DNA from: Octopus sinensis
Lineage: Eukaryota
Direction: 5' to 3'
Assembly (NCBI RefSeq): GCF_006345805.1
Contig: NC_042999.1
Span: forward strand, 110,856,001 to 110,920,000
DNA length: 64,000 nucleotides
The notes under the pieces were generated by a model. That model was not told the origin of the DNA and ran no database searches. It worked only from the letters and a program-made list of their open reading frames with translations. Below, in pieces: positions 2,140 through 57,910 of this stretch. How positions within the stretch are numbered: position 1 is the first letter of the stretch; every line of letters starts with the position of its first letter. The position numbers and the translations under genes were made by a program.

Positions 2140-2560
2140 TCATCATCATCGTTTAATATTTGCCTTCCATGCTCGCATGGGTGGGATGGTTTCACAAGAG
2201 CCAGCCAAGTAGAAACCTTCACCAGACTTTTGTGACTGTTTTGACAGGATTTTTACAGCTGAATGCCCTTCTTAACATCAACCACTCGGCAGAATGGACT
2301 TAGTACTTTTTATGTGGCACAAGCACAGATGAGGTCAGTTTTGGTAAGGTTCTTACAGCTAGATGCCCTTCCTAACATCAACCATCCAGCAGAGTGGACT
2401 TAGTGCTTTTTACATGGCACAAGCACAGGCGAGGTCAGTTTAGGCAAGGGTTTTACAGCTGGATGTCCTTTCGAACACCAACCACTTTTACAGTGTAGAC
2501 TGGGTGCTTTTGAGTGGCACCTGCACTGACAGGGTCACCAGGTACTTGCAAGACAAAAAA
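2140..2560 (-). mobile_element. RTE-type 3'UTR copy with an internal 100-bp tandem repeat
   Basis: (CAT)n end at 2141. The ATGCCCTT-type motif recurs at about 2262, 2362 and 2462. Confidence 0.7.
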
Positions 2561-2611: not shown

Positions 2612-3320
2612 AATAATCCTTTTTACTGTTGGCATGCAGCCTGAACTTTTGTGGGAAGCGCAAGTTGATTATATCAACCTCACTAATCAAGTAGTATTTA
2701 TTTTATCAACCCTGTTTTCAACCCTGAAAGGATGAAAATTACAATCAGCCTTGATGGGATTCAAGATCAGAATTTAAAATTGGATGAAATACTGCAAAAC
2801 TTTTTGTCCAGTGTGCTAATGTTTCTGCCAGCTTTCCACCTTGATAACAATAATCATAATAAGGCTTTCTGCTATAGGCACAAGAGCTGAAAGTTTTAGT
2901 GAGGGATAAGTTGATTACATCGATTCCAGTGTTTCACTGGTACTTAATTTATTGACTTTGAAAAGATGAAAGTCAAAGTCAGTCTCGGTGAAATTTGAAC
3001 TCAAAATGCGAAGATAGGCAAAATACTTCTAGGCATTTCACAAGATGTACTAATGGTTCTGCTATTCTGCCACCTTAATAATAATCATCATAACCCTTTC
3101 TACTATAGGCACAAGGCCTGGAATTTGTGAGGTGGGGATAGTCAATTTCATCGGCCTCTGTACTTCACTGGTGCTTAATTTATTGACTACAAAAGTGTGA
3201 ACAGCAAAATCAACTGCGGTGGAATTTGATCTCAGAACATAAAGGCAGATGACATGCCACTAAACATTTTGCCTGACATGCTAATGATGCTACCAGCTTG
3301 CCACCTTGACAATGATCATA
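2612..3320 (-). mobile_element. Head-to-tail stack of three family D SINEs
   Basis: Three reverse-complement copies separated by short (AAT)n. Further copies lie at about 14560-14690-, 49800-50046+ and 53893-54075+. Confidence 0.75.
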
Positions 3321-4683: not shown

Positions 4684-5540
4684 ATTTCAGGCCTAGTAGA
4701 AAGGATTATTATTATTATTACTATTATTATTATCATAAGGTGGCGAGCTGGCAAAATCGTTAGCATTTCAGTCTTTTGGGATTGATAAATTAAGTACCAG
4801 TGAAATACTGGGGTTGATGTAATCAAATAGTCACCTACCCTGAAATTTCAGGCTTTGTACCTTTAGTAGAATTGATTATTATTTTTATCACATTTAAGGC
4901 AGCAAGCTGACAGAATCGTTAGCATGCTGAGTAAAATGCTTAGCAGTATTTCGTCAGTCACTGCATTCTGAGTTCAAATTCTACCAAGGTCGACTTTGTC
5001 TTTCATCCTTTTGGGGTGGATAAAATAAGTGCCAGTTGAACACTGGGATTGATGTAATCGACTTATTCCCTTCCCCGAAATTGCAGGCCTTGGACTTATA
5101 TTCTGCATTCAAATTCTGCTGAAGTCGACTTTGCTTTTCATCTTTTTGAGTCTCTGACATAAGTACCAGTTGAGCACTGGGGTCAATGTAATTGACTAGC
5201 TTCTTCCTGCAAATTTCAGGCCTTGTGCCTATAGTAGAAAGGATTATTATTATTATTATTATTAGTAGTAGTAGTAGTAGTAGTAGTCACCATAGAAGTA
5301 GTAGTAGTAAAGCAGTGAGCTGGCAGAATCATGAGCATGCCAGGTAACATGCTTAGCAGCATTTCAGTCTCTACATTCTGATTTCAAATTCTGTTGAGGT
5401 CGACTTTGCTTTTCATCCTTTTAGGGTCAGTAAATTAAGTACCAGTGAAACACTGGGGTTGATGTAATTGATTAGTCCCCTCCCTCCAAATTTCAGGTCC
5501 TATGCCTTTAGGAGAAAGGATTATTATTATTATAATTATT
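4684..5540 (+). mobile_element. Head-to-tail stack of four tRNA-derived SINEs (family D) with (ATT)n tails
   Basis: GAGCTGGCAGAATCG (A-box), GTTCAAATTC (B-box) and AGTAGAAAGG(ATT)n recur. Copies start at about 4735, 4895, 5093 and 5308. Confidence 0.8.
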
Positions 5541-5780
5541 ATTCAAGTTTCACTTGAAAAGGAAATTGAGAATAGAGAGGGAAGTGCTGCCTTGAGTGAG
5601 TTTATTGAAAGGTTGGTGAAAGTTGCAAAAATAGCAAGAATGGAGAGAAGGAATCGGAGAGAACACTTGTGCCTGAGGTTTCAGGGAAATCTCGGACAGT
5701 GGGGTTCCTTGATTATCCCTAGAAGCCTTCCTCTTTCAGGAGGGCCACATCTCAATCCTCCTACCTGCCACATTTATTTT
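5541..5780 (+). pseudogene. Probable L1/Tx1-like LINE 3' end
   Basis: FHLKRKLRIEREVLP, then a frameshift, then SEFIERLVKVAKIARM. This resembles Tx1-like ORF2 C-termini (from memory, not searched). Confidence 0.45.
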
Positions 5781-12059: not shown

Positions 12060-12545
12060 TACTTTGGGACACAGGACGGCCTGCTGTGCTTACCTTGAAT
12101 CGTAGGGCGACCTGCTCTGCTTGAAGAGACCTATTGAATCAAGTACATCAACATCAAAAAATCAAATGGAAATTGTAGTTGTGATACCTGTGCTGGTGGT
12201 ACACAAAAAGCACCATTCGAACGTGGCAGATGCCAGTGCCGCCTTGACTGGCTTCCATGCTGGTGGCATGTAAAAAGCACCATCCGAACGTGGCCGATGC
12301 CAGCGTCGCCTTGACTGGCTTCCATGCCAGTGGCATGTAAAAAGCACCACCCGGACGTGACTGATGCCAGCGCCGCCTTGACTGGCTTCCATGCCGGTGG
12401 CATGTAAAAAGCACCCACTACACTCATGGAGTGGTTGGCATTAGGAAAGGCATCCAGTTGTAGAAACACAGCCATATCAGACTGGAGCCTGGTGCAGCCT
12501 CCTGGCTTCCCAGACCCTGCTAGCATGGAAAACGGATGATGATGA
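12060..12545 (+). mobile_element. RTE-type 3'UTR copy with three 67-bp internal repeats
   Basis: AAGCACC recurs with a 67-bp period (CACC at 12211, 12278, 12345, 12412). It ends in a (GAT)n tail. Confidence 0.75.
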
Positions 12546-14439: not shown

Positions 14440-14688
14440 TTTCCTTGACATCATTGCCACCAGAATTCCTATAAGCATTCTCATCATTTTCATCAACACT
14501 TTCTTCATTATTTCTGAAGTCTATATTGTAATAATAATAGTAATAATGATAATAATGATGATTTCAAATTTTGGCACAAGGCTAGCAACTTCAGGGGTGG
14601 AGCTAAGTCAATCACATTGACCCCAGTTTTCAGCAGGTACTTACTTTATCGACCCTGAAAGGATGAAAGGTAAAGCCAACTTTGGCAG

Positions 14689-48845: not shown

Positions 48846-50046
48846 CTGCAGAAACAGTTGTCGGCAATTTACAACCCCATTTGTGTTCTTTACATATATA
48901 TTAAATAAGTATAGGGGTAGTAAGAAGTTTACTTCCGAACCACATAGTTTTGGATTCAGTGCCATTGTATAGCACCATTGGTATGTGTCTTCTATTATAG
49001 CCTTGATTTGACTAAAGTCTTGTGACTGGATTTGGTGGGCCATATATGTCTGTATGTGCATTTGTGTGAGTGTTACTGTCTCTTTGACTTGACCACACAG
49101 GATAGTTGTAAATGAGTGTCACCATCATGCAAGTGGTGTCTCTTGTTTCCAATCTTCTGTGAAAATATGTCTGATCATGAGAAATATTAATTTACTTGGA
49201 AACAGGTGAGAGTTGGTGTCAAGGAGGGTATCTGACCATAGAAATTTGTTTCAATAAATTCTGTCAAAACCATATAAGCATGAAAAAGTGGATGTTAAAT
49301 CAGTGATGTGTTAGCAACAAGAATTTTAATGCAATCAATGCATTTATAATAATTTGTGTCAATTTGTGATTAAAAAAAAAACAAAAAAAAAACAAGCGAA
49401 AAACAGCCAGAATTAAATGAAATATTTTTTACATCATGAAAAAACCTGATACTATTTCTCAGCACATTGTATTTACACTTTGCCTTCTAAGAATTTTGTA
49501 TAAATATCCATCTGCAATATAGTAGGTAGGTAGCAAATTTGGTAGAATGTTAGTTTATTTATTTAAATAATACCCTGTTGTATTTTGTTATGATTTTTGA
49601 TATTCCAGGTTCAACTGCTGGCCATTTCGATGTGGCTTTCATAGATTGATAAAATACTAATGACATTAGAGTAGTCATTCCCACAAAGATAATGACCCAA
49701 CTTAAACAAATGACTAAAACCAGTGCAAGAATTAGAACAAAACTCATCTGGTGTTTATCCATCTGTCTTGTAGGATTTGTTCCAACTCTTTCATTATAAT
49801 TTCAACTCCTGTCAAGGTCAACTCAGCTTTTTATATGTCCAGAGTTGATAAAATAAAGTTCTAGTCAAGTACTGGGGTTAATTATATTCCACTAAAATCA
49901 TTGGCTTTGTGCCTAAATTAGAAACCATTATCTTCATCATTATTATTATTAGTGTAGTACGAGATTTGTAGAATTGAGAAAGTGTTGAAAAGACTGCCTT
50001 GCAGTATTTTGTTCCAATGCTTTACCTTTTGTGTTCAAATTCTTCC

Positions 50047-50391
50047 AATAATAGTGGTTCTGTCGAATTTTTTACATACCATGCTATGTTGTTTTCTTCT
50101 GCCCTAATGCTGTGTTTACATCCAATTAGTCCTCTTTCCCAGCTCTTTCTTGGTACATATAGTCTGTCTGTGTCACGATTTGGATGGAGTATCCTATATC
50201 TAGTTAGCAACTTCTTTGTCTTTCTGTCTAAGCTGTTTAGTTCATCTACTGTCCATGCAATTACCCCTGCTCCATATCTAAAGAGTGAAACCGCCCAAGT
50301 GATGATAGCTTCAATCTTATTCCGTCTGTGTAATTTAGACTTACGGATCAGTCTCAGTCTGCACAATTACTCCACCTTAAATTTTTCTGAC

Positions 50392-50393
<2 letters not shown>
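50047..50393 (-). pseudogene. Older R4/Dong-like RT fragment from a different subfamily
   Basis: RLRLIRKSKLHRRNKIEAIITWAVSLFRYGAGVIAWTVDELNSLDRKTKKLL..HPNRDTDRLYVPRKSWERGL aligns by eye to RVRSILKTELNAKNK..LSKIDRKTRKIL..HPKSDIERLYIQRIEGGRGL of the 875-aa ORF. An in-frame TAA lies just upstream. Confidence 0.85.
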
Positions 50394-50425
<32 letters not shown>

Positions 50426-50519
50426 TAGTTTTATTTTTATAGCATGCTTTCACTTCACTACCGAGCGCAGCTCTGTGTGCCTTGGGTATGTGCTGTAATT
50501 TGTTGTGATGCTCTGATGG

Positions 50520-53147
50520 TTATTGTATGGAAAGTGTTCTGCGTAGGATGTGTGCAGTGCCTAGTAGTGCAATTTTCTGTATGTTATATGTGTTTGTAAG
50601 TCCTGGTGTTTTTGTTATGTATTTGTCTGAATATTTTTTTATCATGCCTAATGCACCTACTATGATAGGAATTGTTTCTGTTTTCAGGTTCCACATTCTA
50701 GTTACCTCTATTTCCAGGTCTTTGTATTTTGAGAGTTTCTCCATTTCTTTTAGAGACACGTTGTCATCTGCCGGTATTGATACATCAATTAGAAAGCATT
50801 TTTTTTCTTCATGATCTCTGACAACTATATCTGGTCTGTTGGCCTTAATTTCTCTATCTGTGTGTATCGGCATATCCCAGAGTATGGTTGCTTTCTCGTT
50901 TTCTGTGACCTTTTCTGGTGTGTGCCTATACCATCTTTTTTCTGTTGTTATTCCATAATGTTGGCATAGCTTCCAATGTATGTAGGTTCCAACTCTGTCA
51001 TGTCTGTGAATATATTCCTTCTTAGCCAGGACTGGGCAGCTAGAGATAATATGATTTATTGTTTCTTGTCCATCTACACATATTCTGCAGTTACTTGTAA
51101 TATTTCTTTTCATTACATGTTTTTGGTAATTTCTGGTGGGGAGGCTTTGGTCTTGTGCTGCAATTAAAAATCCCTCTGTTTCTGCTTTGAGTCCTGAGCT
51201 TCTCAACCATTGCTGGGATTTTTCTTTGTCTATTTCTTTTGCGTTTAGTTTAGTCCAGTATTTACCATGAAGGGGTTTTTCTTGCCATCGTTTTATCATG
51301 GCTCGTTGCTGTTCTATTTTTAGTTTGGATTTCATTTGTTTTATAGCTTTTGTTGTTTCTTCATCATCTTCTTCTTCTTCTTTGTGTTTATTAGGTGGTA
51401 TGATTTCTTGTTTGTATTTGTCAGCTTCCTTAAATACTGAGAACAGTTTTTTGTTTTGCTCGTGTTTTGCTGCTATCTGGATCAGTTTTCCTTCCTTCTG
51501 AAGTAGGTATTTTTGCAGTCCTATGGTGGTTATTTTATAGTAGTTTTCCAGCTGTATAAGGCCTCTACCACCTTCTATACGTTGTATATATAGTCTTTCT
51601 ATGTCAGATTTTGGGTGATGCATCCTAGATCCTGTCAGTATTTTTCTTGTTTTCCTATCTATTTTGGACAGATCATTTCGTGTCCAGTTAAGGATATTGT
51701 AGCTGTAACTTATAACTGGGACAGCTAAAGTGTTGATACCTATTATCTTGTTTTTAGCATTGAGCTCTGTTTTAAGTATTGATCTAACTCGTCTATAATA
51801 TTCTTTTTTTATTTTCTCTTTCATTTGTGTGTGTTGTGTCTTATCTAGTTCATGGATTCCTAAGTATTTGTAAGTTTGGCTTTGGTCTAATTCTTTTATT
51901 TCATTGGTTTTATCTAGTGTGATGTTGTTACTCTTAACTAGTTTTCCTCTTTTCATGGTTACTTTGGCGCATTTTTCTAATCCAAATTTCATATCTATTT
52001 CTTTGGTAAATCCATGAACTGTCTTTAATAGTGTTTCCAGCTGTTTGTCATTTGCAGCATATAGTTTTAGGTCATCCATATATAAAAGGTGGCTGATCGT
52101 TTTGCCGTAACATTTATATCCGCATCCAGTTCTATTTAGCATATCAGATAGAGGTGACAGTGCCAAGCAGAAAAGGAGTGGAGAGAGCGTGTCTCCCTGG
52201 AATATTCCTCTTCTAATGGGGATGTCTTTGGTTTTCATGAGTCCCTCTTTTGTTTGGAGGTGTAGGACTGTTTGCCATTTATTCATAGAGTGCTCTATGA
52301 ATTTTATGATTGTTGGTGCTACTTTGTTAATGGCTAGTGTTTCGAGGATCCATGTGTGGGGGATGCTATCAAACGCCTTTTTGTAGTCAATCCAGGCCAT
52401 ACTGAGGCCTTTCTTCTTTCTGTGGCTGTCTTCAGTTACGGCTTTATTAATCATTAGTTGATCTTTACAGCCATATGAGCCTTTGCGGCATCCTTTCTGC
52501 TCTTTTGGGAACAGTTTGTTTTCGTCCAGGTGCTTGTTCAGCCTTTGCGATATCACTGCAGTAAATGCCTTGAACATAGTAGGGAGGCAGGTTATTGGTC
52601 TGTAGTTTTCTGGTTTTGTTGTTTCATTTGATTTGGGAATTAAGATGGTTTTCCCCTTCGTGAGCCATTCAGGCATTGTCTCTGGCTCTGCTAGTATGCT
52701 GTTAAAGTTTTCAGCCAGCTTTTTGTGCATTCCTGTTAGATATTTCAACCAGAAGTTGGGGATCTTGTCATGCCCAGGTGCCTTCCAGTTGCTTAGTTTT
52801 TGCAGTGCCTGGGTGACCTCTTCAGTTGTTATGGGGGTCCAAAGTTGTTCAGATGCCGAGTTTGTTATTTTCATACTCCTTTTTTTTGGCTGTTCGTTCG
52901 CCGACCATATTTCTTTCCAGAATTCTTCCAATTCTTCTGCCGTTGGTGCTGCAGTGACTTCTATTTTATTTTTGCCCAGTTCTTGGTAGAACTTTTTGGG
53001 GTCGGCGTTGAACTTTTTGTTCTGTTCAAAGAAGCGTTGGCGTTTCTCGTACCGGCGGATCCTTTGAGCTTTGGCAAGGATATCTTGCTTCAGCTTTTCT
53101 TTTATCTCCGGCAAATCTTTTTCTGTGATGTTATATTTGCGGAGCAT
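50520..53147 (-). CDS. R4/Dong-clade non-LTR retrotransposon protein (RT + CCHC + restriction-like endonuclease), N-terminally truncated
   Basis: 875 codons without a stop. RT motifs KAPGHD, NYRPITCL, WIDYKKAFDSIPH, RGIFQGDTLSPLLF and YMDD. C-terminal CRIC..ETINHIISSC knuckle, RHD, and PDIVV..CFLIDVSIP..KLSKYKDL endonuclease motif. Confidence 0.95.
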   Translation of the reverse strand: MLRKYNITEKDLPEIKEKLKQDILAKAQRIRRYEKRQRFFEQNKKFNADPKKFYQELGKNKIEVTAAPTAEELEEFWKEIWSANEQPKKRSMKITNSASEQLWTPITTEEVTQALQKLSNWKAPGHDKIPNFWLKYLTGMHKKLAENFNSILAEPETMPEWLTKGKTILIPKSNETTKPENYRPITCLPTMFKAFTAVISQRLNKHLDENKLFPKEQKGCRKGSYGCKDQLMINKAVTEDSHRKKKGLSMAWIDYKKAFDSIPHTWILETLAINKVAPTIIKFIEHSMNKWQTVLHLQTKEGLMKTKDIPIRRGIFQGDTLSPLLFCLALSPLSDMLNRTGCGYKCYGKTISHLLYMDDLKLYAANDKQLETLLKTVHGFTKEIDMKFGLEKCAKVTMKRGKLVKSNNITLDKTNEIKELDQSQTYKYLGIHELDKTQHTQMKEKIKKEYYRRVRSILKTELNAKNKIIGINTLAVPVISYSYNILNWTRNDLSKIDRKTRKILTGSRMHHPKSDIERLYIQRIEGGRGLIQLENYYKITTIGLQKYLLQKEGKLIQIAAKHEQNKKLFSVFKEADKYKQEIIPPNKHKEEEEDDEETTKAIKQMKSKLKIEQQRAMIKRWQEKPLHGKYWTKLNAKEIDKEKSQQWLRSSGLKAETEGFLIAAQDQSLPTRNYQKHVMKRNITSNCRICVDGQETINHIISSCPVLAKKEYIHRHDRVGTYIHWKLCQHYGITTEKRWYRHTPEKVTENEKATILWDMPIHTDREIKANRPDIVVRDHEEKKCFLIDVSIPADDNVSLKEMEKLSKYKDLEIEVTRMWNLKTETIPIIVGALGMIKKYSDKYITKTPGLTNTYNIQKIALLGTAHILRRTLSIQ

Positions 53148-53156
53148 TTTTGTTCT

Positions 53157-53814
53157 CTTTTTGTTGCTCAGTAGCGTTGCTTGTTTGCTGATCTTTTTGT
53201 TGCTCAGTAGCGTTGCTTGTTTGCTGATTATTTTTGTTGCTCAGTAGCGTTGCTTGTTTGCTGATCTTTTTGTTGCTCAGTAGCGTTGCTTGTTTGCTGA
53301 TTATTTTTGTTGCTCAGTAGCGTTGCTTGTTTGCTGATCTTTTTGTTGCTCAGTAGCGTTGCTTGTTTGCTGATTATTTTTGTTGCTCAGTAGCGTTGCT
53401 TGTTTGCTGATCTTTTTGTTGCTCAGTAGCGTTGCTTGTTTGCTGATTATTTTTGTTGCTCAGTAGCGTTGCTTGTTTGCTGATCTTTTTGTTGCTCAGT
53501 AGCGTTGCTTGTTTGCTGATTATTTTTGTTGCTCAGTAGCGTTGCTTGTTTGCTGATCTTTTTGTTGCTCAGTAGCGTTGCTTGTTTGCTGATTATTTTT
53601 GTTGCTCAGTAGCGTTGCTTGTTTGCTGATCTTTTTGTTGCTCAGTAGCGTTGCTTGTTTGCTGATTATTTTTGTTGCTCAGTAGCGTTGCTTGTTTGCT
53701 GATCTTTTTGTTGCTCAGTAGCGTTGCTTGTTTGCTGATTATTCTTTTTGTTGCTCAGTAGCATTGCTTGTTTGCTGATTATTTTTGTTGCTCAGTAGCG
53801 TTGCTTGTTTGCTG

Positions 53815-53816
<2 letters not shown>
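53157..53816 (-). repeat. 18-unit tandem array of 36-bp (A) and 37-bp (B) units at the LINE 5' end
   Basis: On the plus strand A=CTTTTTGTTGCTCAGTAGCGTTGCTTGTTTGCTGAT, and B has TA in place of the first C. Order from 53157: A, A, (B,A)x7, a 40-bp variant, B. There are no spacers. Confidence 0.95.
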
Positions 53817-53868
<52 letters not shown>

Positions 53869-54077
53869 TTTACCATTATTATTATTATTATCATAAGGCA
53901 ATCAAGCAGAATTGTTAGCACATTCTGAATTTAAATTCCACCAAGGCTGACTCTGCTTTTCATCTTTTCAGGGTCAATAAAATAAGTGCCAATTGTGTAC
54001 TGGAGTCGATGTAATCAACTATCCCGCTCCCCCAAATTTCAGTCCTTGTGCCTATAGTAGAAAGGATTATGTTGATA

Positions 54078-54373
54078 TTATTATTATAGAAACAAAGCTC
54101 AGGTTTTGTCTTATTCCTTGTAGGATTCTTTTGGTTAGCAGGTTACTGTCTGTAACCTTAGGTATTCACATGCTTTCAGCAGTATTTCAAGTGCTTAAAA
54201 CCCTCTCGATAATTGTTGCTGCCCCTAAGAGGCAAACTATCTGTAGGAGCTCTACCAGGCATTCTATTTCAATCTCCTTCAGCCATTTGTCTATATCTTG
54301 GCTACTGTTCCCAATGCACCAATTATTATAGGCACAACCTTTACTGTTCACATGCTCCAAATTCTTTCTTTTC
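54078..54373 (-). pseudogene. Third R4/Dong-like 3' fragment with (TAA)n tail
   Basis: Translates as RIWSM*TVKVVPIIIGALGTVAK, then a frameshift, then IDKWLKEIEIECLVELLQIVCLLGAATIIERVLST*. This is homologous to the C-terminus of the long ORF. Short TAA repeats lie on both sides. Confidence 0.8.
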
Positions 54374-56300: not shown

Positions 56301-57910
56301 GAATTACATTTCTACATGTGAAAACTGGAGTATTTAATGAATCAGTAGAATGCATTCTAGTTGTTATGATGCAAATCTGGCAACACAAGATTGTCATGGG
56401 AAATTGTTACAGTTTGTAACCTAGCATTTCGAGGCAGCATTGATCATGTATAAGAAATATATGAATCATAAACATTTCCAATGGGGCTAAGCATTCTGTT
56501 TGCATTGGAAAATGTTTGAAGTCTCTTTTTGTAGGAAAAGAAAAAAAAAATTTTTTACTAATGTAAAGCTGGTGTGAGTCTTTTGAAGTGAATTTTGGTT
56601 TTTAAATAATTTTATGATCAGTACCATAGTATATGTTTTATTGAGTGAAAGAGACAAATAAAGAAAAATATGCCAAAGTAATGAGCTATTTTATACTTTT
56701 GCCTTGCAGGGCATTATTCCATGGCTGAAGATAAAGATAGTAAACATTAGCAGGTTTCTGAATAATTATAGTTCTTAAGCAAAGCAAAAATTAGAAACCA
56801 GATTAAACTAGTGATGATCTGTGTTGCCAAAACTCTAGCAAAATTTGTGAGTTTAGATAAGTCTTGTCTACCATGAGAAGAAGAATTGGTAGTCGTCAGA
56901 GATTTAGATAGAATCCCGCACATTATTTGTTTCAACTGTATGCGTTCTGTGTTCAAATCCCACTGAGGTCAGCTTTACCTTTCATCATTTCAGAGCCAAT
57001 AAAACAGTACCAATGCAGAGTGGCAGATTGTTGGAAGCACAAAAGATCAAACTGAATGCCATGCACTATTTCTTCTGACTCTTTGCTTTTTTAGTTCAGA
57101 TCACACCGTGGCATTCATGGGTGGAAGATTTAATCCATCCCCCAGTTTAACACAACTACCTTGAGTACCTTTTGTAGATTCCCACCACCACCACCATCAC
57201 CAATGCCACCACTCTTTTACAAGCATTTGGTCGCCAGTTTGGAGATAACTTCTCCTCCTTTCACCTGTCATAGAGAAACTGTGAAGGGTCACAGCCCCTG
57301 CTTAATCTTGTGACTGAAAGACCAAAGTAAATAGAGGAATACTGAACATTATTCAAAAAAGCAGAAACATGTTTAGAATTACTTCCCATACATACAAAAA
57401 ATGTGAATTGGAGGGGTGGGGTGAATATTAGTCCTCAACTATTGTATTTGCTTTCCTGTGTGCATATACTGTTTTTTTTGTGTGTGTTCCATACATATGT
57501 GTTAAAAATAATATATGATAATATCAAAATAGTTAGTTACATCACTGCAAAAACATTCTAAGAATCTGGACAATCTTTCGTTTTGGAAATATCTATTTCT
57601 AGCAGCTTGTATAATTTTACAGTGGCCTTATTCTTGGTTGGTTAGTTTATTAAAAACTTCTAGAGAGGTCCACATCATAAATAACAAAAAAAAAACAAGC
57701 AAAAGAAAAGAAGGAATATATCTTTGTTATTCACTTACAGTTCTTTATGGATATTCCTGATATTCATGTAATTCGTGTGTAGGTTATTATTTTTTTTTTT
57801 TTGTCCTTGCTGTTATTCTAGTTGTTGTTTTAAATCTTAAAGCATTTTATAAAATAAATAAATAAGATTTATAGTGAGGCAATAACAATTTTTGAAAACT
57901 AATGATCACA

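What the first reader, a model, noticed from the sequence alone, without database searches (positions are those of the whole stretch)
53147..53867. Self-derived 36/37-bp alternating array at the 5' end of an intact-ORF R4/Dong retrotransposon
Seen: 18 near-identical units abut the RT ORF. On the element strand, unit A reads ATCAGCAAACAAGCAACGCTACTGAGCAACAAAAAG, which encodes ISKQATLLSNKK and continues in frame into RTK-MLRK. The repeat is therefore the element's own coding sequence at the truncation point. Unit B ends in ATA instead of AG, re-creating the TAATAATC target junction, so target-like bases are interleaved with element sequence. The units alternate strictly as a 73-bp higher-order repeat. 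Inference: repeated template jumping or re-priming at the 5' junction using AAT microhomology produced an AB dimer that was then amplified, so a site-specific LINE seeded a new minisatellite. A TGA in unit 3 closes the upstream frame, leaving Met 53147 as the start of a protein that still has the RT and endonuclease. The array could act as a replacement 5'UTR (speculative).
Basis: partly seen in the sequence, partly recalled or inferred. Interest (0 to 1): 0.8.

Follow-up and report, generated by a model that had tools for sequence, protein, structure and literature searches.

The report
Minisatellite grown from truncated Dong retrotransposon
A jumping gene landed incomplete in a TAA repeat, and its first 36 bases were later copied 18 times into a small local repeat array; the array is real and tidy, but it is an ordinary kind of event with no sign of a function.

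Summary
The array is real. Eighteen head-to-tail 36/37/40-bp units lie on the minus strand at 53157-53816, including seven identical 73-bp AB dimers. The 36-mer occurs nowhere else in the window.

The array sits between a (TAA)n tract and an intact 875-codon ORF (50520-53147) that has the RT motifs, a CCHC knuckle and a PD..D..K restriction-like endonuclease. Relatives at about 54% identity have single ORFs of about 1200 aa and are flanked by (TAA)n, as Dong elements are. This copy is therefore 5'-truncated and lacks about 320 N-terminal residues.

The unit runs in frame into the ORF. Its peptide ISKQATLLSNKK lines up with the relatives' E-[ILM]-S-K-G segment, with modest statistics (13 of 300 shuffles score as well). 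Its base composition matches the element's sense strand. Junction types b and c repeat 4 nt of the target junction (AATA|ATCAGC).

The perfect dimer periodicity means most of the growth was DNA-level amplification, not serial RT jumps. Truncated relatives have clean (TAA)n junctions, and full-length relatives have unique 5'UTRs.

I found no evidence of promoter or UTR function. The protein lacks the conserved N-terminal region, so the copy is probably dead on arrival. Whether other copies in the source genome carry the array could not be tested. Interest is low to moderate.

The parts
53817..53891 (-). (TAA)n microsatellite at the 5' side of the element, interrupted once by GGTAAAAA. This is the target tract. 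The 'AT' of the first ATCAGC could belong to either the tract or the element (2-nt microhomology).
53780..53816 (-). Unit 1, type B (37 bp), ending AAAAATA. It abuts the (TAA)n tract.
53740..53779 (-). Unit 2, type C (40 bp), ending AAAAAG+AATA. It carries a private C>T change (CAATGC) that creates the only ATG in the array.
53193..53739 (-). Units 3-17: seven 100%-identical 73-bp AB dimers (A = 36 bp ending AAAAAG; B = 37 bp ending AAAAATA) plus one further A unit.
53157..53192 (-). Unit 18 (type A). It is contiguous and in frame with the ORF and encodes ISKQATLLSNKK. It is presumably the original 5' end of the truncated insertion.
53148..53156 (-). AGAACAAAA (codons RTK) between the last unit and Met 53147. 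It is part of the ancestral ORF.
50520..53147 (-). Intact 875-codon ORF including the stop. It is the C-terminal ~73% of a Dong-type polyprotein. Its Met is an internal residue of the ancestral ORF.
51852..52640 (-). Reverse transcriptase domain (residues 170-432, RVT_1; YMDD at 356-359).
51036..51089 (-). CCHC zinc knuckle (C687, C690, H699, C704).
50727..50834 (-). Restriction-like endonuclease core (P772-D773 ... D788 ... K804/K807). These columns are invariant across relatives, and the alignment to R2 structures runs through residue 856.
50423..50519 (-). 3' UTR (97 bp), ending ...AAAACTACTG before the (TAA)n tract.
50394..50422 (-). (TAA)n at the 3' junction of the element.

Best explanation
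A young, 5'-truncated Dong-type LINE (R4/R2 superclade, restriction-like endonuclease) inserted by target-primed reverse transcription into a (TAA)n tract that began as the tail of a SINE-like repeat. The insertion broke off inside the ORF at the codons for ISKQATLLSNKK and joined the target through AT/AAT microhomology.

The first 36 bp of the insertion then became a local minisatellite. A few short duplications, at least two of them spanning the target-element boundary, carried 2-4 target bases (TA, AATA) into unit junctions and created three junction types (a, b, c). One 73-bp AB dimer was then amplified by replication slippage or unequal sister-chromatid exchange to seven identical copies. 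The older B and C variants were left at the 5' edge.

The array has no demonstrated function. The ORF is intact because the copy is young, but it lacks about 320 conserved N-terminal residues and the 5'UTR, so the copy is most likely dead on arrival.

Shown: the array anatomy, the truncation, the family assignment, and the target-like fillers. Inferred: self-derivation of the unit (moderately supported), the order of events, the DNA-level amplification, and the lack of function.
For: - Array anatomy and uniqueness.
- (TAA)n on both sides of the element.
- RT, CCHC and PD..D..K motifs, and homology to R2 structures over residues 96-856.
- Relatives are about 1200 aa, and our Met aligns to their residue ~320-350. 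The ~890-900-aa database relatives are themselves truncated or stop-mutated copies.
- Relatives are (TAA)n-flanked: 30 of 42 have (TAA)>=4 within 600 bp downstream.
- Dong elements target TAA microsatellites (PMC3812793).
- Unit peptide against the relatives' E-[ILM]-S-K-G...K-x-R segment. Profile score 58.6 against shuffles at 56.06 +/- 1.22, with 13 of 300 as good.
- Unit composition is A50/C25/G17/T8, against A43/C20/G18/T19 for the ORF sense strand and A33/T35 for the window.
- b and c junctions repeat AATA|ATCAGC from the target junction.
- Seven identical dimers indicate amplification of one dimer.
- Truncated relatives have clean junctions.
- 5'-truncated R2 junctions typically show 1-5 nt microhomology or added bases (PMC2718515).
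- Minisatellites commonly start by slippage between short repeats inside transposable elements and then expand by slippage or unequal exchange (PMC6947457).
Against: - Homology of a 12-residue peptide is statistically weak (about p = 0.04 against composition-preserving shuffles).
- No second copy of this lineage was available, so I could not show that full-length copies carry the 36-mer once.
- Microhomology at the inferred duplication endpoints is only 1-2 nt.
- No simple series of unequal exchanges reproduces the exact order b c a (b a)x7 without an extra event.
- Perfect identity of the dimers could partly reflect assembly polishing.
Confidence: 0.68

Rival explanations
1. The first repeats were made during integration. 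After reaching the 5' end of a broken RNA, the Dong RT switched between the (TAA)n top strand and the RNA. It re-primed in the A5 tract using cDNA ends such as ...GATTA(TT) and laid down several units with target-derived fillers. Later DNA-level amplification only multiplied the AB dimer.
For: - b and c junctions carry bases identical to the target junction.
- All three junction types lie at the very 5' end of a TPRT product.
- R2-type RTs add non-templated bases and jump templates at RNA 5' ends (PMC2718515, citing in-vitro work).
- One relative (L006) also has a short-unit array directly abutting a truncated 5' end.
Against: - Fifteen strictly alternating junctions cannot come from independent stochastic jumps, so at most 2-3 junctions could be RT-made.
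- Known R2 jumps go to the 3' ends of acceptor RNAs, not to an internal site 36 nt downstream (my own knowledge of the Bibillo and Eickbush work).
- At least four other 5'-truncated relatives have plain junctions.
- The L006 unit is not evidently self-derived.
- The same fillers follow from slippage that spans the junction.
Confidence: 0.2
2. The array is an inherited feature of a transcribed, N-terminally shortened sublineage. It would be a monomer-type 5'UTR or promoter, as in mouse L1, so that Met 53147 starts a working protein and the array drives or stabilises its mRNA.
For: - The ORF is intact over 875 codons, with all family-invariant RT and endonuclease residues.
- Some relatives have short tandem repeats in their 5'UTRs (L045, 29 bp x 3.3).
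- Each unit starts with TCAG, which resembles an initiator core (from memory, untested).
Against: - The array abuts mid-ORF sequence, not a 5'UTR.
- The missing ~320 residues include a domain conserved across relatives.
- Full-length relatives have unique 5'UTRs.
- The unit is found nowhere else in the window or in the metagenome and viral collections.
- The array RNA has no structure above shuffles.
- The Met is not a conserved start.
Confidence: 0.07
3. The array is not derived from the element. It would be a pre-existing or captured minisatellite (or a template switch to another RNA) that happens to be in frame for two units.
For: The peptide similarity is only marginally better than composition-matched shuffles (13 of 300). 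L006 shows that a non-self array can sit at a truncated 5' end.
Against: - The array lies between the (TAA)n tract and the ORF with no other sequence in between.
- The ISK...KK positions match the family segment in register with the following KYNI anchor.
- Its strand composition matches the element, not the host.
- Its junction fillers copy this particular target junction.
Confidence: 0.05

Closest known systems
Dong (Bombyx mori) and Dong-like elements of the R4 clade, including DongBg of the snail Biomphalaria
   Same: It has a single ORF with RT followed by a CCHC knuckle and a PD..D..K restriction-like endonuclease, and no AP endonuclease. It is inserted in a (TAA)n microsatellite with (TAA)n on both sides, and frequent 5' truncation is typical of the group (PMC3812793).
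   Different: This copy lacks the 5'UTR and about 320 N-terminal residues, and it carries a 660-bp array of its own first 36 bp. Placement next to the Dong and R4 reference sequences by phylogeny was not done.
Transposon-derived minisatellites (Alu-, B1- and LTR-derived; Haber and Louis slippage model)
   Same: A short segment of a transposable element was duplicated and then expanded head-to-tail into tens of copies with higher-order periodicity and divergent edge units (PMC6947457).
   Different: The seed lies exactly at the 5' integration junction of a site-specific LINE, and two junction types include target bases. The flanking direct repeats are only 1-2 nt.
5' junction variation of R2/R1 insertions (microhomology, non-templated bases, short target duplications)
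   Same: There is AT/AAT microhomology at the target-element junction of a 5'-truncated copy, and extra target-like bases are present (PMC2718515).
   Different: The described R2/R1 junctions carry a few extra bases or one short target duplication, not an 18-unit array of element sequence.
Mouse L1 5'UTR monomer arrays
   Same: There are tandem repeats at the 5' end of a LINE, upstream of the coding region.
   Different: L1 monomers are about 200 bp, are shared by all members of a subfamily, and have promoter activity. Here the units are 36 bp, seen at one locus only, abut mid-ORF sequence, and have no evidence of activity.

Membership tests
R4/Dong clade of restriction-like-endonuclease non-LTR retrotransposons | Reverse transcriptase of non-LTR type in a single ORF | tested here: met
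   RVT_1 E = 2e-32 over residues 170-432. Homology to R2 proteins 9nl3, 9dou and 8gh6.
R4/Dong clade of restriction-like-endonuclease non-LTR retrotransposons | CCHC knuckle plus PD..D..K endonuclease C-terminal to the RT, and no AP endonuclease | tested here: met
   C687, C690, H699, C704, P772, D773, D788 and K804/K807 are invariant in alignment A1. The alignment to R2 structures runs to residue 856. Pfam finds no Exo_endo_phos domain in this ORF or in full-length relatives.
R4/Dong clade of restriction-like-endonuclease non-LTR retrotransposons | Insertion into (TAA)n microsatellites (Dong) | tested here: met
   (TAA)n at 53817-53891 and 50394-50422. Relatives are flanked likewise. Literature: PMC3812793.
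R4/Dong clade of restriction-like-endonuclease non-LTR retrotransposons | Phylogenetic grouping with the Dong and R4 reference RT sequences rather than R2, NeSL, CRE or Hero | not tested
   No reference sequences were available in the tools. Assignment rests on target and domain order only.
R4/Dong clade of restriction-like-endonuclease non-LTR retrotransposons | Full-length, autonomous copy (5'UTR plus complete ~1200-aa ORF) | tested here: not met
   Our Met aligns to residue ~320-350 of the relatives. The conserved N-terminal domain is absent.
Transposon-derived minisatellite | Head-to-tail array of 10-100-bp units | tested here: met
   18 units of 36/37/40 bp.
Transposon-derived minisatellite | Unit derived from the adjoining element's sequence | tested here: inconclusive
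   The unit is in frame and similar to the relatives' segment, but the profile test is only marginal (13 of 300 shuffles). Composition fits the element. No same-lineage full-length copy was available.
Transposon-derived minisatellite | Copy-number polymorphism between individuals | not testable with these tools
   Only one assembled sequence is available.
LINE 5'UTR monomer array (L1-type promoter repeats) | Array shared by members of the subfamily and placed upstream of a complete ORF | tested here: not met
   The 36-mer is absent elsewhere in the window and in the collections searched. Full-length relatives have unique 5'UTRs. The array abuts mid-ORF sequence. Caveat: the source genome itself could not be searched.
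LINE 5'UTR monomer array (L1-type promoter repeats) | Promoter activity | not testable with these tools
   No expression data were available.
RT template-jump concatemers | Independent junctions with variable non-templated or microhomology bases | tested here: inconclusive
   Three junction types exist, two of them target-like. However, 14 of the 17 junctions belong to seven identical dimers, which points to DNA-level amplification.

The most novel reading that the evidence does not exclude
The seed repeats (junction types a, b and c) were written by the Dong reverse transcriptase itself. In this reading, reiterative re-priming at the 5' end of a truncated template, alternating with the (TAA)n top strand, acted as a telomerase-like or DRT2-like 'stutter' by a eukaryotic site-specific LINE in vivo. 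Such elements would then seed minisatellites at their integration junctions as a regular by-product.
Probability: 0.12. Interest if true: 0.6.

Novelty: new member of a known kind. Interest (0 to 1): 0.25.

Why it matters
This is a clean, datable example of a minisatellite born at a retrotransposon integration junction. The edge units still record how it started, with target bases inside unit junctions. If many truncated Dong copies in the source genome show the same thing, it would point to an RT-driven route to tandem repeats in a genome already very rich in micro- and minisatellites. As a single locus it is a nice illustration, not a new principle.

Tried and rejected
- Exact 24-mer of the unit against metagenome contigs and viral contigs: no hits.
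- Exact look-up of the ORF product in the gene-position collection: not on record. The best protein relatives are only 54-57% identical, so no same-lineage copy could be examined.
- Idea that ~890-aa relatives mark an ORF1/ORF2 boundary at our Met: rejected. L001 is a truncated copy next to (TAA)n, and L002 has an in-frame stop.
- TRF survey of 85 related loci for self-derived 5' arrays: none like ours. The L006 16-mer array is not evidently self-derived.
- Identity of the missing N-terminal domain: Pfam and PDB sequence searches gave nothing. The AlphaFold model is confident (pLDDT 87, four helices), but Foldseek against the PDB gave no significant match (best E = 1.5). My Myb/SANT guess is therefore unconfirmed.
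- Rfam and ARAGORN on the window and on relatives' 5'UTRs, looking for an HDV-like ribozyme or tRNA-like end: nothing.
- RNA fold of the array: no structure above shuffles.
- Host identity: a cephalopod, possibly an octopus, is suggested only by my memory of its SINE and by the microsatellite richness. It was not tested.
Full report
**Observation**

The repeat is real. Tandem Repeats Finder reports 53158-53820 with period 73, 9.0 copies and 98% matches. On the minus (element) strand, splitting at ATCAGC gives 18 units spanning 53157-53816.

The order from the 5' end is:
- B: 37 bp, ending AAAAATA.
- C: 40 bp, ending AAAAAG+AATA, with one C>T change.
- (A, B) x7, where A is 36 bp ending AAAAAG.
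- A, then a final A that runs straight into AGAACAAAA-ATG.

The seven AB dimers are 100% identical. The 36-mer with up to 3 mismatches occurs 18 times, all inside the array, against zero in 100 shuffles. 'Strictly alternating' is therefore nearly right, but not at either edge.

The upstream frame reads ...Y*ATKIISKQATLLSNKKISKQATLLSNKKRTKMLRK.

**The element**

ORF 50520-53147 (minus strand, 875 aa) has RVT_1 (E = 2e-32) and a weak zf-RVT hit. It aligns over residues 96-856 with solved R2 proteins (9nl3, 9dou). It keeps the family-invariant YMDD, the CCHC knuckle (C687, C690, H699, C704) and the PD..D..K motif (P772, D773, D788, K804/K807). No AP endonuclease is found in it or in full-length relatives.

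The element (50423-53816, 3394 bp) is bounded by (TAA)n at 53817-53891 and 50394-50422. TAA microsatellites are the known target of Dong elements, including one from a snail (PMC3812793).

Relatives retrieved from public assemblies are likewise (TAA)n-flanked. L003-L005 are examples. Among relatives with a complete C-terminus and enough downstream sequence, 30 of 42 have (TAA)>=4 within 600 bp downstream. The Dong/R4-type assignment is supported by domain order and target. I did not do a phylogeny with reference sequences.

**Truncation**

The closest database relatives (54-57% identity) are mostly 1190-1250 aa, and our Met aligns to their residue ~320-350. I checked whether relatives of about 890-905 aa signal a natural ORF boundary at this point, and they do not. 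L001 is another truncated copy directly next to (TAA)n, and L002 is a longer copy with an in-frame stop.

This copy therefore lacks the 5'UTR and about 320 N-terminal residues. The missing part includes a conserved domain (W..EEY...W...DANKLAN.RRDI). That domain folds confidently as four helices (pLDDT 87) but has no significant PDB match by sequence or fold. Its role in DNA binding is my guess, by analogy with the R2 N-terminus.

An intact 875-codon frame mainly says the insertion is young.

**Is the unit the element's own sequence?**

Three lines of evidence agree, and none is decisive.
- The last unit is contiguous and in frame with the ORF.
- In register with the conserved KYNI anchor, ISKQATLLSNKK-RTK aligns with the relatives' E-[ILM]-[SE]-[KR]-[GN]...K-x-R segment. 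An example is P0011, EISKNTDNVNEKKRKSIFKKHNI. In a profile built from 92 relatives the real peptide raises the score to 58.6 bits, against 56.06 +/- 1.22 for composition-preserving shuffles. Thirteen of 300 shuffles do as well.
- The unit's composition (A50/C25/G17/T8) resembles the ORF sense strand (A43/C20/G18/T19) and not the window (A33/T35).

I rate self-derivation as likely (about 0.85). The proof would be a full-length copy of the same lineage.

**Junctions**

Three junction types exist:
- a = AAAAAG|ATCAGC
- b = AAAAA|TA|ATCAGC
- c = AAAAAG|AATA|ATCAGC

The target junction is ...TAATAATA|ATCAGC. Types b and c both repeat its last 4 nt (AATA), and type a repeats none. Type b equals type c minus 3 nt, so the two may not be independent.

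A 37-bp or 40-bp duplication whose left end lies inside the (TAA)n tract reproduces b or c exactly. This can be read as polymerase slippage after integration, or as RT switching between the target and the RNA during integration. The sequence alone cannot separate these.

What it does show is that 14 of the 17 junctions belong to seven identical dimers. That cannot arise from independent stochastic jumps and requires amplification of one 73-bp dimer by replication slippage or unequal exchange, the standard route for minisatellites (PMC6947457). The variant B and C units at the 5' edge fit the usual pattern of unhomogenised array ends. Microhomology of 1-5 nt and extra bases are typical of 5'-truncated R2 junctions (PMC2718515).

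**Is an array a regular feature?**

Full-length relatives have unique 5'UTRs of about 180-470 bp after the (TAA)n tract. Truncated relatives L001, L023, L060, L063, L077 and L079 show plain (TAA)n-element junctions.

A TRF survey of 85 related loci found nothing comparable. Two loci came closest: a 16-bp x 15 array abutting a truncated copy in L006, whose unit is not evidently self-derived, and short repeats inside the 5'UTR of L045.

The unit has no exact 24-mer match in the metagenome or viral collections, and the ORF product is not on record.

**Function**

Nothing supports a 5'UTR or promoter role. The array RNA is no more structured than shuffles (z = +0.49), Rfam finds nothing, and the array abuts mid-ORF sequence.

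**Context**

The (TAA)n tract appears to be the tail of a SINE-like repeat. Copies ending in (ATT)n on the plus strand lie at 49798-49949 and 53892-54095, among at least 10 in the window. Two other Dong-like scraps lie in the same tails: 50025-50393 and 54193-54365.

The genome is extremely microsatellite-rich. From memory the SINE looks cephalopod, but I did not test this. For orientation only: in Octopus vulgaris, Dong-R4 is reported as the LINE group with the most recent insertions. There are 1129 of them, and 4.73 Mb divided by 1129 gives about 4.2 kb each (PMC13282606). That is longer than this 3.4-kb copy.

**Verdict**

This is a young, truncated, probably dead Dong-type insertion whose 5'-terminal 36 bp seeded a local minisatellite. 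The bulk of the array is DNA-level amplification, and an RT contribution to the first repeats is possible but unproven. It is a new member of a known kind, and I score interest at 0.25.

Noticed in passing
window 49798-49949, 53892-54095; also 2613-3237 (-), 4694-5542 (+), 14537-14685, 56945-57014: A SINE-like repeat of about 170 bp that ends in (ATT)n on its own strand. The Dong-type copies sit in these tails, so the SINE tails serve as landing pads. The shared TAA-type 3' end raises the question of whether Dong mobilises this SINE. At 2.6-3.2 kb and 4.7-5.5 kb the SINE-like units are themselves arranged in tandem.
   Followed up: partly
window 50025-50393 (-): An older, degenerate Dong-like fragment from the region after the RT domain, with 37-44% aa identity to the main copy and its relatives. 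It lies immediately 3' of the main element and is separated from it only by the (TAA)n at 50394-50422. This means successive insertions into one microsatellite.
   Followed up: partly
window 54193-54365 (-): A short scrap matching the C-terminus of Dong-like proteins (P0002 residues 1147-1203), next to an (ATT)n at about 54079-54090.
   Followed up: no
window 2253-2520 and 12205-12415: Other longer-unit tandem repeats (100 bp x 2.7 and 67 bp x 3.1) that look derived from interspersed repeats. Small arrays derived from transposable elements may be common in this genome.
   Followed up: no
L006 192-429 (WLWI01025636.1): A 16-bp x 15 tandem array (TGGTGCATATTCAACA) directly abuts the 5' end of a truncated Dong-like relative, with no (TAA)n in between. 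The unit is not evidently derived from the element.
   Followed up: partly
L045 80-640: A full-length relative has (TAA)n, then a 5' end that looks tRNA-like by eye (ARAGORN and Rfam negative), and a 29-bp x 3.3 repeat inside its 5'UTR.
   Followed up: partly
N-terminal ~95 residues around W..EEY of full-length relatives (alignment A2): A conserved domain that is absent from the window copy. It is predicted as a confident four-helix unit (pLDDT 87) but has no significant sequence or fold match in the PDB.
   Followed up: yes
window, whole: The window is extremely dense in micro- and minisatellites (59 TRF rows scoring 100 or more in 64 kb) and has about 32% G+C. No long host ORFs were seen.
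   Followed up: no
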